From positions 1,302,001 to 1,366,000 of the forward strand of contig NW_027361709.1 of assembly GCF_039654945.1 (NCBI RefSeq): a DNA stretch of 64,000 bases. The letters run 5' to 3'. This document shows positions 39,301 through 46,976 of the stretch, one piece after another. Numbering within the stretch: position 1 is the first letter of the stretch; every line of letters begins with the position of its first letter. Under the pieces are notes generated by a model. The model saw only the letters and a program-made list of their open reading frames with translations, was not told the DNA's origin and did not search any database. The translations under genes were made by a program, and so were the position numbers. This DNA comes from Dendrobates tinctorius (taxonomy: Eukaryota).

Positions 39301-41337
39301 GGGCAGCTTCTTGTAAAAGCTGTAATTAGTGGGGGAGACACATTTCCATTTCTGAGATAATAGACCGTAACGATTACATATTTTTGCAGGTAGCAGAAAA
39401 GGACCCTTCTATCGGGAGTGACTTCTCCGACGTAGAAGACGTGATGCCGCTGGCCAGATTTTCTCAGGATGACGATTTCCCGCCTTGCTGTTCTATAAAT
39501 GATGATGACACTCGCCAGTTTGAAAGTCTCTGGGAACGTTACACAGAGCCGATCATCCCCATCTACAGACCACCCGCAGAACGTGACACCTGGCGCCAGA
39601 AAGAGCAAGACCGCAGCTACGCCTCCGAACCTTCCCTGCTGGACAGCAGTCGCCTCAGCACATCCAGCGACAACGTCAGTCCCATGGGGAGGAGCCACAA
39701 GCGATACGAGTCTTTTGACGATGCCTGGACCTCTGGTCACAGCACCAAATCCAGCAGACGGACTCTGGAAATTCCTTCTACGAGTTCGGACTCCAAGTTC
39801 CGGTCTGATGGCTTCATAGACACCCACTGCCACCTAGACATGCTCTACTCCAGACTGTCGCACAGGTCGTCCTTCGCCGACCTCCGGGAACAGTTCACCT
39901 CCACCTTCCCCCGGGAATTTCAGGGCTGCATCACCGATTACTGCGATCCTCGCACGCTGCAGAGGCTTCCATGGGATCAGGTGCTGAACGAGGACTCAGT
40001 GTGGGGGGCATTTGGCTGTCACCCCCACTTCGCTCAGTATTATGATAAGTACCTGCATGAAGACATGATGATGGCACTGCGGCACCCGAAAGCCATCGCC
40101 TTTGGAGAAATGGGTCTTGACTTTTCCCATAAATGCTCCACGGAGATCGCAGACCAGATCACGGTGAGGAATTACTTCTTGTAATCTTTTTTATTATTAT
40201 TGTGCTGTAACTCATGTAGCTTCCCCCCCCAACACCACTTCCAGTTTCTTCCTGCTTTTAAATATCTCTGCTTGCTGTCATTTATAGGAACACAGAGGTA
40301 CATGGCTCCGATAACCGGACGGTCAGGGGCCGTGCGCCGGTGTCCATCACATGATCGGGACAGATCTGTATAAAGTGGGATCAGACTACGGTATTTGTAG
40401 TCTGTTACCATGGAAACAGGTCTTTGTGATCTGCCCTGATCAGTGATGTGAGCCCCCCTCCCATGTATTATACAATATTTAATGTTTCTATTAAATACCA
40501 GTAAGCAGAATTCTTACAACCAAACTTGTCATAGCTTTTATGTTTGCTGCGGGTTACAGCGCATCTGCAGGGGGGTTTAGTTTTCATTGCATTTTATCAG
40601 GTGTACTAATAGCATTGCTCTGTTTTCCACCCGGGCAGGTTTTCGAGAAGCAGCTGAAGCTGGTGGTGCCGTTGGGGAAGCCTCTCGTCATTCACTGTCG
40701 GGGTGCAGACAAGGAATTGTTCAAAATATTGAAAAAATGGCTTCCTCGAGACTACAAGATACACCGGTGAGTTACGTTGCCTGTGCGAGCTCCATGTACA
40801 TCTGCTAGGTCTGGACCCTCAGTAACATCTCCTCCTCCGCAGACACTGCTTCACCGGCAGCTACGACGTCATCGAGCCTTTTCTGAAGGAGTTCCCGAAC
40901 ATGATGGTGGGCTTCACCGCCGTCCTGACGTATCCTTCCGCTGTGGAACCGCGAGATGCCGTTACAAAAATCCCCTTGGACCGGCTGATTGTGGAGACGG
41001 ACGCCCCGTATTTCGTTCCTAAACAGGTAATGGGTGACATCTGTTTGGAATGAACACTACTACCCCCACTATGCACGCCAGCAGAGCATCCTCCGTGCTG
41101 ACACTGAACCTGCAGGCGGCATCTAGCAGTGTTGCATCATATCCCAGGGATCGGTGTATCTGTCACTAATGATACTTTTGTTTTTTTTTTCTTTAGGTGC
41201 CTAAACATGTCTGTAAATTTTCGCACCCCGGTCTCGCCATACACACCGTTCACGAAATCGCCAGGCTACAAAACGTACCCGTCAAAAACGTCATGGCAAA
41301 ATTACGGGAGAACACGTACCGGATCTATAATGTATGA
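36353..41337 (+). CDS. TATDN2: TatD DNase domain-containing protein 2 (~663 aa)
   Basis: Coding exons 36353-36694, 38404-38826, 39390-40163, 40639-40766, 40843-41026, 41197-41337; GT-AG and phase-consistent. Long Ser/Arg-rich N-terminus, then TatD motifs IDTHCH, GEMGLD, LVIH, HCF, ETDAP. AATAAA at 41363. Confidence 0.96.
36775..38168. repeat. 31-bp minisatellite (~45 copies), TATDN2 intron
   Basis: Unit gtagtgtaatgcacagcccatagtcctccat, arranged in variant blocks. Confidence 0.96.
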
Positions 41338-42572: not shown

Positions 42573-45048
42573 TCAGTCCTCCTGGGGATCTGCTGAGACA
42601 AAGAGAAGAAACTCGTATAAATCATCGTCCACGCGGGTGAAGTTATATATACAATGATGCACGACCCATTACAGCTGATAACGCTTCCTCCGTCATGGCG
42701 TGCTGCTGGGGTCTATTAAATCCCTAATCATTGGGGGTCCGACCTGCGCCAGCAATATATAGGAAGAGACGACTGGTATAACTGCCAGCAGCATCTTACA
42801 GGGGCCCCCAACTATACCTAAGACTCTTAAAGGGGCATTCCAGTGTTTGGATGGGAAACCCATTATAGTATATGTGTAATTGCCTTTTTGGTCGCACTTT
42901 TGCCCCCTTTATGTTTTGCTTTTTGAAATCGGTCGCAGACTACAATTCCCATGATGCACTCTTGATTTTCATCCTAAGCTGAGCTACTGCAGTCTCCGCC
43001 CCCTTGTGCATTTCATATTGTTCTCCTGCACTGCGGAGCCGCTCACATTAGTTCCCCTCCGATAAATATCTAATGTCCGAGCAGCAAAGTGAAGCTGAAC
43101 TGCAGGTGGTCACTTGGCTGCGGACTAAGCGGTGAGCTTTATAACATTACATTGCATGCTTTCTATAAGGGTAACATTTTATAAAATGGAACATCCATTT
43201 AACCGTGGGATCAGAATGGACGATCACTTACAGGTTACTGATCAGAGCTATAAGTCCAGGAGCCACGTGCCGCTCTGCTCCCGGAGGGAGAGACGATGTT
43301 TACAGCAGTTCTTCACTTTGTTTAGTGGTTTTGGCAGCTCCAGGTGAGGGGCCCCTCACTCCGCCATTATCTCCTCGCTCCGCCATTATCTCCTCGCTCC
43401 TCCATTGTCTCCTCACTCCATTGTCCCCTCGCTCCTCCATTGTCTCCTCTCTCCGCCATGGTCTCACTCCTCCATCGTCTCCTCACTCTTCTATGGTCCC
43501 CTCACTCCTCCATTGTCCCCTCGCTCCGCCATTATCTCCTCGCTCCTCCATTGTCTCCTCACTCCATTGTCCCCTCACTCCTCCATTGTCTCCTCACTCC
43601 TCCATTGTCTCCTCACTCCTCCATTGTCTCCTCACTCCTCCATTGTCCCCTCACTCCTCCCTTATCTCCTCACTCCGCCATTGTCTCTTCACTCCACCAT
43701 TGTCCCCTCTCTCCGCCATGGTCTTAGATCTGTCCCTGCAAGCATTAGCACAGTGGGGGGATACATTGGCGGCCGCTGATCTGTTTGTGTTCTCCTATAA
43801 CCCGGGTGACTCGCTGGACAATGAACCCTCCTCCCCAGGTTATAGCGTTACACGTGCAGCAGGCACACAATGCTCTGTACCTTCAGGGGAGCCGAGGGCG
43901 AACATTCCAAGCAGGAGGTTTTCTATGGCCGCTTTCTGCCTCCAAATCTGCTCCCGAGTCACCTTCACATCAACATCCAGAGGGATCGTCACCTGGAATA
44001 GAGAAGATTAAGGGAAGGCGGAGGCACGGACCCAGCAGGGGTCCAGACCCAACGGGAGCATGGATCCAGTGGGGAACCGGCGGAGACACGGACCAGATCC
44101 CTCAGGGGCACAGACCCAGCAGGGGCCCAGATCCAGTAGGGGCCCAGTCTCGCCAGAGACATGGACCGAACGGCGGTATAGATCCCGTGGGGACATGGAC
44201 CCAGCAGGAGCGTGGATCAAGCGGGGGGCACAGATCCAGCGGGAGCACTGACCCTAGGGGTGCACGGAACCAGCGGGGGCTCAGACCCTGCAGGGGGCCA
44301 GATTCCTCGGGGGCAGAGACCCAATGAGAGTACGCATCCAGCAGGGGCCCAAACCCGGGGGGGGGGGGACACAGACCCAGTGGGTGCACAATTCAGGCAG
44401 ATGACCCCCCCCACTTTCAGCACCCCACAATATACAGACCCCGATCTCTTCCTGATCTTCAGAGCGCTCGTCTGTAAAATCCCCCTCAGAGTCTCCGGCC
44501 TCCCTGCGGCCCATATTATTGTACTGCAGCTTTTTTGGTATCTTCTTGCCCTGGAACAAAATTTGAGGTAAAAAAAATGTATATACATAATTCACTAGAA
44601 TACTCCCAGAGCTGCGCTCACAATTCTACTCACTGTAGACCTATCTTGGGTCTATTCTGTGAGCTCCTATAATGTACGGAATGCAGCCTGCAGATGCTGA
44701 ACCAGCAGGATGCATCAGTATGATGTGCTCACCTCAAATCTAAGGAGAAAGTAGCGGTACTGTGAATGCAGCTCTGGATGTGACTAGAGTATGACATGGT
44801 CAGATTGTACAATTATTTTGCAGTTTGTTAAGACAAAACTTCATCACTCTTCATGACAGACGGCTAAAGTAACAGGATGCTGGGAGTTGGGGTTTTGCTG
44901 GAATGCTGCAGTTTGGTGATCGCTGCTCTCCACTTACCGCGTTTTTCTGCATATCTGCCGGACTTAGGAAGCTCGATCCGCTCTCCACATCCTCCGTCCA
45001 CAGAAGGCAAAACAGGACGACGGTGCAGAGTGACGCTTTACCCAACAT
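42573..45048 (-). CDS. GHRL: Preproghrelin (~117 aa)
   Basis: Coding exons 45048-44938, 44550-44440, 43992-43881, 42592(or 42589)-42573. A 23-aa signal peptide precedes GSSFLSPADMQKNA|GKKIPKKLQYNNMGRR; C-ghrelin with VTIPLDVDVKVT. ATTAAA at 42508-42503; synteny between TATDN2 and SEC13. Confidence 0.97.
43350..43725. repeat. Pyrimidine-rich ~20-bp degenerate tandem repeat in a GHRL intron
   Basis: cctcactcctccattgtc(t/c) units. Confidence 0.85.
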
Positions 45049-45144
45049 CGTCGCTGGAGATCTGCAAAATAGAAAAAATCTGTTACATTGAGTTCAAAGC
45101 AAAAAGGGTCAATACCTGGAGATGTGACGTACAAGAAGCCTCAC

Positions 45145-45184
45145 GGGAAAGTCTTCACACCCTCGGGTCCGCAGCACATTTATA
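45145..45184 (-). promoter_or_regulatory. GHRL TATA box and very short non-coding first exon
   Basis: TATAAA at 45184-45179 (minus strand); donor CCC|GTGAGG at 45144; acceptor before 45061; 83-nt intron. Confidence 0.6.
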
Positions 45185-46810
45185 GGAAAGGCCGAAGAAA
45201 TGTGGAGGCGACTGAACCTACACAACGAGGGAATGATGAGAGCCGCCATTGTGACCGCGGCCGCTGTTCTGACCCCGGGGACCTGATACTGATAACGCAG
45301 GAGGGAGCAGGAAGAATTTCTTTAATTGCTCTGATGTCGTGTTTGTTTGCGTTTTTTTCCATCTATATTAGAATGGATAAGTCACAGGGAGAGAGAGCAA
45401 ATATGTGACCGCTGTCACCGAGGAACGGAGTCATGTACCCGACGATCAGCAACAATGGAACCCGAGGAAGCAAGTGCGAAACGCACGTTGGGGCCTCTGC
45501 TCAGCACACCGACAAGAGCATTTTATACATGCTTTGGCTTCACTTTGGTGAGGTTTCTTGACCATTATCCTCTTTATTTGTGGGGAAATTGATGCCCTGC
45601 GCAGGACCTTCAACAGCTTATTGAGGGCAATTAGCTGGGCAGTGATTTGCTGACACACGGTTATATCACGGCCCGCCGGTCACATTATGATTTATGCAGT
45701 GAATAAGTTTATACCTGTATGTCGTCTTTGTGTATTTAAAAATAAAATATAATTTTTTACTTTGTTAAAAACAAGTCTCCAAACTTACTTGTTCACATTT
45801 CTTTATTTGAAGACACAAGATCCCAAATGTTCTCCTATGTTGTCAGTGTTGTATGGAAAGTCTCTCTTGGCTATTAATATGCCATTTTTCTGAATCCATA
45901 CCCCTAGCTATGTGTTTATAATGTAATGTATGTAGTGAGTGCAGCTCTGGAGGATAATACAGGATGTAACTCCGGATCAGTAATGTAATGTATGTACACA
46001 GTGACTGCACCAGCAGAATAGTGAGCGCAGCTCTGGAGTATAATACAGGATGTAACTCAGGATCAGTAATGTATGTACACAGTGACTGCACCAGCAGAAT
46101 AGTGAGTGCAGCTCTGGGGTATAATACAGGAGGTAACTCAGGATCAGTAATGTATGTACACAGTGACTGCACCAGCAGAATAGTGAGTGCAGCTCTGGAG
46201 TATAACACAGGATGTAACTCAGGATCAGTAATGTATGTACACAGTGACTCCACCAACAGAATAGTGAGTGCAGCTCTGGAGTATAATAAAGGGTGTAACT
46301 CAGGATCAGTAATGTAATGTATGTACACAGTGACCGCACCAACAGAATGAGTGCAGCTCTGGGGTATAATACAGGATGTAACTCAGGATCAGTAATGTAA
46401 TGTATGTACACAGTGACTACACCAACAGAATAGTGAGTGCAGCTCTGGAGTATAATAAAGGGTGTAACTCAGGATCAGTAATGTAATGTACGTACACAGT
46501 GACTGCACCATCAGAATAATGACTGCAGCTCTGGGGTATAATACAGGATGTAACTCAGGATCAGTAATGTAATGTATGTACACAGTGACTACACCAACAG
46601 AATAGTGAGTGCAGCTCTGGAGTATAATAAAGGGTGTAACTCAGGATCAGTAATGTAATGTACGTACACAGTGACTGCACCATCAGAATAATGACTGCAG
46701 CTCTGGGGTATAATACAGGATGTAACTCAGGATCAGTAATGTATGTACACAGTGACTGCACCAGCAGAATAGTGAGTGCAGCTCTGGAGGATAATACAGG
46801 ATGTAACTCC

Positions 46811-46856
46811 ATGGAATAAATGGCGCTATAACAATAAATAATAATAATAATAATAA
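46811..46856 (+). mobile_element. Ultra-short L2 3'-tail insertion with target-site duplication
   Basis: atggaataaatggcgctataacaataaa(taa)n is identical to the 3' end of the LINE at 28736-28779 and is flanked by taactcc on both sides. Confidence 0.85.
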
Positions 46857-46976
46857 TAACTCCGGATCAGTAATGTAATGTAAGTACACAGTGACTGCAC
46901 CAGCAGAATAGTGAGTGCAGCTCTGGAGTATAACACAGGATGTAACTCAGGATCAGTAATGTACTGTATGTACACA

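What the first reader, a model, noticed from the sequence alone, without database searches (positions are those of the whole stretch)
44503..44979. Frog ghrelin with a Gly-Arg-Arg amidation signal, as in teleost ghrelins
Seen: the spliced mature region reads GSSFLSPADMQKNAGKKIPKKLQYNNM-G-R-R (GGC CGC AGG at 44511-44503). Established: dibasic cleavage, carboxypeptidase trimming and PAM convert X-Gly-Arg-Arg into X-NH2. C-terminal amidation is regarded as a teleost ghrelin trait, and the tetrapod ghrelins I recall (mammals, bullfrog ...NMN-RR) are free acids. Inference: this frog may make a 27-residue, Ser3-acylated, Met-amidated ghrelin, a possible convergent gain of amidation in a tetrapod. 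It has Ser3 (GSSF), unlike bullfrog Thr3.
Basis: partly seen in the sequence, partly recalled or inferred. Interest (0 to 1): 0.75.

Follow-up and report, generated by a model that had tools for sequence, protein, structure and literature searches.

The report
Poison-frog ghrelin with amidation signal
The hunger-hormone (ghrelin) gene of the dyeing poison frog ends its hormone with Gly-Arg-Arg, the signal that gives fish ghrelins an amidated tail; about 115 other four-limbed species sampled lack it, except other poison frogs and the coquí, but no peptide chemistry has yet shown the amide.

Summary
On the minus strand lies the ghrelin gene. Its product is 100% identical, over the part compared, to NCBI's Dendrobates tinctorius "appetite-regulating hormone". 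The spliced mature region reads GSSFLSPADMQKNAGKKIPKKLQYNNM-G-R-R, with GGC CGC AGG at 44511-44503. A spliced contig from an independent sample with the same species label carries this exon without a single difference.

Across 134 preproghrelins, a Gly before the terminal dibasic site occurs only in:
- dendrobatoid frogs (Dendrobates, Phyllobates, two Anomaloglossus genes);
- Eleutherodactylus coqui;
- teleosts.

Twenty-five other anurans have N, H, S or R there. Caecilians and salamanders have Q, about 80 sauropsids have H, Q, N or S, and the bowfin has T. The motif is therefore not widespread in anurans. It is a clade-wide trait of poison frogs, probably gained a second time in the coquí lineage.

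Reviews state that C-terminal amidation is a fish feature absent from tetrapod ghrelins, and I found no paper on dendrobatid ghrelin.

Amidation itself is an inference. The site is hypervariable, and fish with the same motif also make Gly-extended and truncated forms. Ser3 is the usual anuran state and is not special.

Verdict: a new variant of a known hormone, of moderate interest, needing mass spectrometry.

The parts
44938..45092 (-). First ghrelin exon. The 5' UTR reaches at least 45092 and the ATG is at 45048. It encodes the 23-residue signal peptide MLGK...DVES, then ghrelin residues 1-14 (GSSFLSPADMQKNA), with G1 at 44979-44977 and Ser3 at 44973-44971. Donor gtaagt at 44937.
   Evidence: sequence and translation. 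X6 contig contiguous over 45092-44937, then spliced; 100% match to P0001.
44440..44550 (-). Second coding exon. It encodes ghrelin residues 15-27 (GKKIPKKLQYNNM), Gly28 (44511-44509), Arg29-Arg30 (44508-44503), and then the acidic spacer EAGDSEGDFTDERSEDQEEIG.
   Evidence: codons; spliced contigs X6 (0 differences) and X10, and genomic contig X5, all keep GGC CGC AGG.
44503..44511 (-). GGC CGC AGG = Gly-Arg-Arg. This is the predicted prohormone-convertase cleavage, carboxypeptidase trimming and PAM amidation signal.
   Evidence: Synonymous Gly codons in relatives: GGC in Phyllobates, GGT and GGG in Anomaloglossus.
43881..43992 (-). Third coding exon (VTIPLDVDVKVTREQIWRQKAAIENLLLGMFALGSPE + 1 nt). 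It is the motilin/ghrelin-associated C-peptide region. Acceptor ccag, donor gtacag.
   Evidence: weak PF04643 hit on residues 64-101 of P0001. Exon boundaries by homology to L001-L004.
42573..42589 (-). Probable last coding mini-exon (AT CCC CAG GAG GAC TGA, giving ...SPE-DPQED stop). An AATAAG lies at about 42504. The precursor would be 116 aa. NCBI's 124-aa model instead reads through the exon-3 donor.
   Evidence: (alignment with the last exons of Phyllobates and both Anomaloglossus genes). Not confirmed by reads.

Best explanation
This is the single-copy-looking ghrelin (GHRL) gene of Dendrobates tinctorius.

Shown:
- The gene is spliced and transcribed.
- It encodes a signal peptide followed directly by GSSFLSPADMQKNAGKKIPKKLQYNNM-Gly-Arg-Arg.
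- The Gly is fixed across dendrobatoid frogs.

Inferred from the established pathway for peptide hormones and from teleost ghrelins with the same motif:
1. Signal peptidase exposes Gly1.
2. GOAT acylates Ser3.
3. A prohormone convertase cuts after Arg29-Arg30.
4. Carboxypeptidase E removes the two Arg.
5. PAM converts Met27-Gly28 to Met27-NH2.

The product would be a 27-residue, Ser3-acylated, C-terminally amidated ghrelin, probably accompanied by Gly-extended or shortened forms.

The Gly most likely arose from Asn (AAC) through a one-step intermediate such as Ser (AGC). It arose in the stem of Dendrobatoidea and separately in the coquí lineage, at a poorly constrained position. The trait is therefore convergent with teleosts but may be selectively near-neutral.
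For: - Sequence and splice.
- Identity to the annotated D. tinctorius protein.
- Distribution of residue 28 in 41 and then 134 preproghrelins. Gly occurs only in Dendrobates, Phyllobates, Anomaloglossus (two genes), E. coqui and teleosts.
- Codons: GGC, GGC, GGT, GGG in dendrobatoids, against AAC in Bufo and Leptodactylus and AGC in Rhinoderma.
- Gene tree: the dendrobatoid clade has 100/100 support and E. coqui is not joined to it.
- Unnamed related organisms B and E keep the GRR codons.
- Teleost ghrelins with X-GRR are isolated as amides: the barfin flounder 20-residue amide (PMC3760443) and catfish ghrelin-amide (PMC3713435).
- The same RR site follows the bullfrog peptide ...NMN in P0032.
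Against: - No peptide data exist for any dendrobatid.
- Residue 28 is the most variable position near the cleavage site (N, H, S, R, Q, G), so Gly may be a neutral variant.
- In fish with the motif, the amide is not always the main form. In barfin flounder the major form was a 19-residue non-amidated peptide and a Gly-extended 21-mer was present. Catfish has a natural Gly-extended form.
- Ghrelin's C-terminus is not part of the conserved 'active core', so any effect on the receptor may be small.
- The tissue of the transcript-bearing runs is unknown, and PAM co-expression in frog ghrelin cells was not tested.
Confidence: 0.62

Rival explanations
1. The Gly is a neutral substitution at an unconstrained position. 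The secreted hormone is mostly Gly-extended ghrelin-28 or a trimmed free-acid form, so amidation is absent or a minor by-product without physiological meaning.
For: Position 28 takes six different residues across amphibians. Heterogeneous C-termini, including Gly-extended and truncated non-amidated forms, are documented in fish with the same motif. From memory of Kaiya 2001, which is not held in the library, bullfrog makes both 27- and 28-residue forms, which shows that C-terminal trimming occurs.
Against: Gly is retained in all four dendrobatoid genes through synonymous change (GGC, GGT, GGG) and in two further related organisms. From general knowledge, Met-Gly followed by a dibasic pair is a standard, good PAM substrate context, as in tachykinin and bombesin precursors. 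Amide forms are recovered in every teleost examined that has the motif.
Confidence: 0.28
2. The main product is a short ghrelin cut at an internal basic pair. Cleavage after Lys16-Lys17 would leave Ala14-Gly15 and give ghrelin(1-14)-amide, which would make the terminal G-R-R irrelevant.
For: A14-G15-K16-K17 is itself a Gly + dibasic motif. It is conserved as GKK or GKR in most non-ranoid anurans. Goldfish ghrelin-12 amide is used as a ligand in the literature.
Against: From general knowledge, Lys-Lys is a poor convertase site, and the residue after it is Ile (Pro in the GKR species), which disfavours cleavage. Mammalian and bird ghrelins keep internal RK/KK pairs uncut. From memory, bullfrog ghrelin is isolated full length.
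Confidence: 0.06
3. The GGC codon is an assembly or annotation artefact, or a private allele of the sequenced individual.
For: None beyond the general possibility. The reference does carry one private synonymous variant at 45031.
Against: An independent sample with the same species label gives an identical exon (X6, 0 differences). Organisms B and E keep the codons. Phyllobates and both Anomaloglossus genes also encode Gly.
Confidence: 0.02

Closest known systems
Teleost ghrelins (eel, trout, tilapia, goldfish, catfish, barfin flounder; here Megalops, Conger, Scleropages, Brienomyrus precursors)
   Same: The GSSFLSP core follows the signal peptide, and the mature peptide is followed by Gly plus a dibasic pair and then an acidic residue (V-GRR-D/F against M-GRR-E). 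Teleost peptides are isolated as C-terminal amides.
   Different: The frog peptide is 27 residues, not 19-23. Its middle and C-terminal sequence is of the anuran type (ADMQKNAGKK...YNNM). The Gly arose independently inside a tetrapod clade whose relatives have N, H or S. No amide has yet been shown chemically.
Bullfrog (Aquarana catesbeiana) and other ranoid ghrelins
   Same: Same gene, same exon structure and the same RR processing site after residue 28. The C-terminus ...GNM-N-RR compares with ...NNM-G-RR.
   Different: Ranoids have Leu2-Thr3 (GLTF) and Asn28, so no amidation signal. The poison frog has Ser2-Ser3 and Gly28.
Other hyloid ghrelin precursors (Bufo bufo, Leptodactylus fuscus, Rhinoderma darwinii, Hyla sarda, Engystomops)
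   Same: Mature regions are nearly identical (Bufo: GSSFLSPADMHKHAGKKIPKKLPYNNM-N-RR), and the flanking codons CGC AGG GAG are identical.
   Different: Residue 28 is Asn (AAC), Ser (AGC) or His instead of Gly (GGN).
Eleutherodactylus coqui preproghrelin (P0006)
   Same: It also has Gly before RR (DNP-GRR), the only other tetrapod case found.
   Different: It has Thr2 (GTSF) and a Pro-Gly terminus, and this isoform has an 8-residue insert at the exon junction. It does not group with dendrobatoids in the gene tree, so it is probably an independent gain.

Membership tests
Ghrelin / preproghrelin (GHRL) | The conserved N-terminal core GSSFLSP lies immediately after a cleavable signal peptide. | tested here: met
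   MLGKASLCTVVLFCLLWTEDVES|GSSFLSP. G24, F27, L28, S29 and P30 are invariant in 41 sequences.
Ghrelin / preproghrelin (GHRL) | A hydroxyl residue (Ser or Thr) at position 3 for O-acylation by GOAT. | tested here: met
   Ser3 is encoded at 44973-44971. The acylation itself cannot be tested with these tools.
Ghrelin / preproghrelin (GHRL) | Significant full-length similarity to annotated preproghrelins. | tested here: met
   100% to the D. tinctorius appetite-regulating hormone over the part compared; profile E = 2.6e-56, and the hits are ghrelins of frogs, caecilians, newts, birds and fishes.
Ghrelin / preproghrelin (GHRL) | A C-terminal motilin/ghrelin-associated peptide domain (Pfam PF04643). 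| tested here: inconclusive
   16.2 bits against a cut-off of 22 (E = 0.0095) for P0001. The Pelobates homologue passes (26.9 bits). Anuran sequences are diverged from the Pfam seed.
Ghrelin / preproghrelin (GHRL) | A conserved exon plan, with the core plus residues 1-14 in the first coding exon and a phase-0 junction, and genomic neighbourhood next to TATDN2. | tested here: met
   the same junctions in Phyllobates, Anomaloglossus and Bufo, and spliced contigs; a TatD_DNase exon at 39816-40170. The human TATDN2-GHRL adjacency is recalled from memory.
C-terminally amidated peptide hormone (PAM substrate precursor) | The mature peptide is followed by Gly and then a basic cleavage pair (X-Gly-Arg-Arg). 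| tested here: met
   ATG GGC CGC AGG = Met27-Gly28-Arg29-Arg30.
C-terminally amidated peptide hormone (PAM substrate precursor) | The dibasic pair is the site actually used to release the hormone. | not testable with these tools
   Homologous RR or GRR sites bound the purified bullfrog peptide (from memory, Kaiya 2001) and fish peptides. No peptide data exist for this species.
C-terminally amidated peptide hormone (PAM substrate precursor) | A C-terminal alpha-amide demonstrated on the native peptide. | not testable with these tools
   This needs LC-MS/MS. Predicted masses are given.
C-terminally amidated peptide hormone (PAM substrate precursor) | Co-expression of PAM, a prohormone convertase and carboxypeptidase E in the producing cell. 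| not tested
   These genes lie outside the window. The tissue of the RNA-type contigs is not on record.

The most novel reading that the evidence does not exclude
Poison frogs (Dendrobatoidea), and independently direct-developing Eleutherodactylus, secrete a truly amidated acyl-ghrelin that is maintained by selection. The amide would lengthen its half-life or alter GHS-R1a signalling. That would make this a third and fourth independent origin of ghrelin amidation in vertebrates and the first in tetrapods, possibly tied to their specialised feeding or parental-provisioning biology.
Probability: 0.12. Interest if true: 0.65.

Novelty: new variant of a known kind. Interest (0 to 1): 0.42.

Why it matters
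Reviews treat C-terminal amidation as a defining difference between fish and tetrapod ghrelins. A tetrapod clade whose precursor carries the fish-type signal gives a natural test of two questions. Is the amide simply a consequence of one Gly codon, which would mean the processing machinery is present in tetrapod ghrelin cells? And does the amide change stability or receptor pharmacology? The work is cheap: one mass-spectrometry experiment on stomach extract, plus synthetic amide and acid peptides on the frog receptor. The finding also corrects how anuran ghrelin is usually pictured. The much-cited bullfrog Thr3 peptide is the ranoid exception, and most frogs have GSSF. The physiological impact may well be small, because the C-terminus lies outside the active core and the site evolves freely.

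Tried and rejected
- Motif searches for a mammal- or bird-like FNAPF/PFE[IV] obestatin region downstream found nothing. Anuran C-peptides read VTIPLD instead, and the exon was then placed by homology.
- My first exon-3 start (43989) was wrong by one codon, because the intron's first GTC mimics the Val codon. I corrected it to 43992.
- The look-up of encoding contigs had no record for the E. coqui isoform, so its Gly codon was not read.
- The bullfrog purification paper (PubMed id 11546772) is not held. Statements about the 27/28-residue bullfrog forms rest on memory and on the P0032 sequence.
- Literature searches for dendrobatid ghrelin, or for an amidated tetrapod ghrelin, gave only unrelated mentions.
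- The search of earlier findings by words found nothing on ghrelin.
- The gene tree is too short to date the Anomaloglossus duplication or to place E. coqui.
- An assembly-error or private-allele explanation was rejected.
- I did not use structure prediction or the representative-library search. A 27-residue flexible hormone would gain nothing from either.

Full report
**What is in the sequence**

The minus strand of 45092-42573 carries a four-exon gene.
- The ATG at 45048 opens a 23-residue hydrophobic signal peptide (MLGKASLCTVVLFCLLWTEDVES).
- It is followed directly by GSSFLSPADMQKNA, and the exon ends at 44938 with a gtaagt donor.
- After a 387-base intron and a ttccag acceptor, exon 44550-44440 reads GKKIPKKLQYNNM-GRR-EAGDSEGDFTDERSEDQEEIG.

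The predicted mature peptide is the 27-mer GSSFLSPADMQKNAGKKIPKKLQYNNM, followed by Gly28-Arg29-Arg30.

**Is it real?**

A protein search restricted to the first coding exon returned NCBI's 'appetite-regulating hormone [Dendrobates tinctorius]' at 100% identity, followed by ghrelins of other frogs. The window is therefore from the dyeing poison frog.

I laid contigs of four public runs on 44400-45150.
- X6 has the same species label as the source but a different sample and study. It has a 325-nt contig covering 45092-44937 joined to 44549-44438, skipping 387 bases with GT..AG ends on the minus strand. It has no difference at all in the GRR exon.
- X10 (another organism, coded E) has the same splice and unchanged GRR codons. 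Its changes at 44515/44516 turn Asn26 into Arg.
- X5 (organism B) has a genomic contig that also keeps the codons.

The codon is neither an assembly error nor a private allele, and the gene is transcribed and spliced as modelled. The run names are coded and their tissue is unknown, so I cannot say the RNA came from stomach.

**Gene model details**

Exon 3 is 43992-43881 (VTIPLDVDVK...LGSPE plus one base, donor gtacag).

NCBI's 124-aa model reads through this donor and ends ...GTEHCVPAARVTL. In Phyllobates, both Anomaloglossus genes and Bufo, the last 5-7 residues come from a separate mini-exon. The homologous sequence is present in the window at 42589-42573 behind a tctcagcag acceptor. It would give ...SPE-DPQED-stop and a 116-aa precursor. 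This last exon rests on homology only.

A TatD_DNase-domain exon on the plus strand at 39816-40170 places TATDN2 next door. From memory, human GHRL has the same neighbour. Earlier first-reader notes on this window also mention IRAK2 and TATDN2.

**How widespread is Gly-Arg-Arg?**

I aligned 41 preproghrelins and then scanned all 134 proteins retrieved in three searches.

| Group | Residue before the terminal dibasic site |
|---|---|
| Dendrobates tinctorius | Gly (NNM-GRR) |
| Phyllobates terribilis | Gly (NNN-GRR) |
| Anomaloglossus baeobatrachus, two genes | Gly (NNL-GRR, NNM-GRR) |
| Eleutherodactylus coqui | Gly (DNP-GRR) |
| Bufo, Leptodactylus, Mixophyes, Pseudophryne, Hyperolius, all ten ranoids | Asn |
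| Engystomops, Pelobates, Pelodytes, Leptobrachium, Rhinophrynus, both Xenopus, Ascaphus | His |
| Hyla, Rhinoderma | Ser |
| Spea | Arg |
| Three caecilians, two salamanders | Gln |
| About 80 birds, turtles, crocodilians, lizards and the tuatara | His, Gln, Asn or Ser; never Gly before a dibasic pair |
| Bowfin (Amia) | Thr (T-RR) |
| Four teleosts (Megalops, Conger, Scleropages, Brienomyrus) | Gly (V-GRR or V-GKR) |

Equally, the trait does not belong to this one species. It is shared by Dendrobatidae and Aromobatidae (families confirmed), so it predates their split.

**Origin**

The codons are:
- GGC in Dendrobates and Phyllobates;
- GGT and GGG in the two Anomaloglossus genes;
- AAC in Bufo and Leptodactylus;
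- AGC in Rhinoderma.

The flanking CGC AGG GAG is identical in all of them. Going from Asn (AAC) to Gly (GGC) needs two changes, and Ser (AGC) is a one-step intermediate that exists in living hyloids.

In a maximum-likelihood tree of 21 anuran precursors, the four dendrobatoid genes form a clade with 100/100 support. Rhinoderma is weakly attached to it (84/80). E. coqui sits in the unresolved hyloid polytomy and is not joined to that clade.

Bufo, Leptodactylus, Hyla and Engystomops all lack Gly. Two gains, one in stem Dendrobatoidea and one in the coquí lineage, are therefore more parsimonious than one gain with several losses. This conclusion leans on published frog phylogenies recalled from memory, because the gene is too short to settle it.

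The three different Gly codons show that the residue has survived synonymous turnover. That is compatible with constraint but does not prove it.

**What the motif should do**

X-Gly-basic-basic is the canonical precursor signal for C-terminal amidation. A prohormone convertase cuts after the pair, carboxypeptidase E removes the basic residues, and peptidylglycine alpha-amidating monooxygenase (PAM) converts X-Gly into X-NH2. This is established biochemistry.

In ghrelin specifically the signal works.
- Barfin flounder ghrelin, predicted from ...PPRA-G-RR, was isolated as a 20-residue amide (PMC3760443).
- Catfish makes ghrelin-22 amide (PMC3713435).

The RR pair is at the same aligned position as in bullfrog, whose precursor reads ...NMN-RR.

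I therefore put about 0.6 on D. tinctorius secreting an appreciable fraction of Ser3-acyl ghrelin(1-27)-Met-NH2.

The same fish papers are the main caveat.
- In flounder the most abundant form lacked the last residue and was not amidated, and a Gly-extended 21-mer was present.
- Catfish has a natural Gly-extended form with different activity on receptor expression.

A mixture is the realistic expectation.

**Comparison with the literature**

[quoted passage not shown] Full-text searches for ghrelin with dendrobatids, with amphibian C-terminal amide, or with amidation in tetrapods found nothing on this point. Within the held library the feature is undescribed, although the sequences themselves are public, automatically annotated proteins.

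**What is not special**

In the alignment, GSSF, GTSF or GASF is the state in all non-ranoid frogs, caecilians and salamanders. GLTF is confined to the ranoid group Natatanura: Rana, Lithobates, Aquarana, Pelophylax, Glandirana, Staurois, Nanorana, Pyxicephalus and Mantella. Ser3 is ancestral and unremarkable.

**Assessment**

There is a predicted, convergent, clade-wide amidation signal in a tetrapod ghrelin that has not been described, but the amide is unproven.
- Residue 28 is the least constrained position around the cleavage site.
- The C-terminus lies outside the 'active core' that reviews hold responsible for activity.

I rate it a new variant of a known kind, with moderate interest (0.42). 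One mass-spectrometry experiment, with the masses computed, would decide it.

- Read laying was given 751 letters.
- The N run at 1265-1393 was not touched.
- No step needed referral.

Noticed in passing
window 44542-44550 (minus strand), residues 14-17 of the mature peptide: Ala14-Gly15-Lys16-Lys17 is a second Gly + dibasic motif inside ghrelin. It is conserved as GKK in most hyloids, myobatrachids and Hyperolius, and as GKR in Pelobates, Spea, Leptobrachium and Rhinophrynus. It resembles the internal GRR that yields goldfish ghrelin-12 amide. The next residue is Ile or Pro, so cleavage is doubtful.
   Followed up: partly
window 43840-43880 and 42573-42589: NCBI's D. tinctorius protein model (P0001, 124 aa) appears to read through the exon-3 donor (gtacag at 43880). 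A conserved last mini-exon encoding DPQED-stop aligns with those of Phyllobates and Anomaloglossus, which implies a 116-aa precursor.
   Followed up: partly
L002 and L003 (Anomaloglossus baeobatrachus, two chromosomes): Anomaloglossus has two intron-bearing ghrelin genes on different chromosomes, and both have G-R-R. Hyperolius riggenbachi also has several ghrelin-like models (P0009, P0034, P0043). The age of the duplication is unresolved. Only one D. tinctorius protein was found in the searches.
   Followed up: partly
window 44750-44800 (ghrelin intron): A segment of about 40 nt is covered at very high summed depth (hundreds to thousands) by many unrelated contigs in all four runs, with numerous loose ends. 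It is probably the conserved core or terminus of a dispersed repeat.
   Followed up: no
window 45031: The reference has T where all four other runs, including the conspecific X6, have C. On the minus strand this is TCA to TCG, a synonymous Ser6 variant in the signal peptide.
   Followed up: yes
window 39816-40170 (+): An ORF at 39384-40184 carries the N-terminal half of a TatD_DNase domain (PF01026, E = 4.6e-14). It is presumably TATDN2, lying tail-to-tail with ghrelin.
   Followed up: partly
window 43205-43780 and 45843-46975: ORF translations show strongly periodic repeated peptides on both strands. This indicates tandem-repeat arrays flanking the ghrelin gene, one downstream of exon 3 and one about 0.8 kb upstream of the promoter. 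Phyllobates shares the upstream array at about 92% identity.
   Followed up: no
P0120 (Heteronotia binoei) and P0127 (Amia ocellicauda): The gecko precursor reads KLH-GRD, so the usual RR pair is disrupted. The bowfin reads V-TRR without Gly, which fits amidation being teleost-specific among ray-finned fishes.
   Followed up: no
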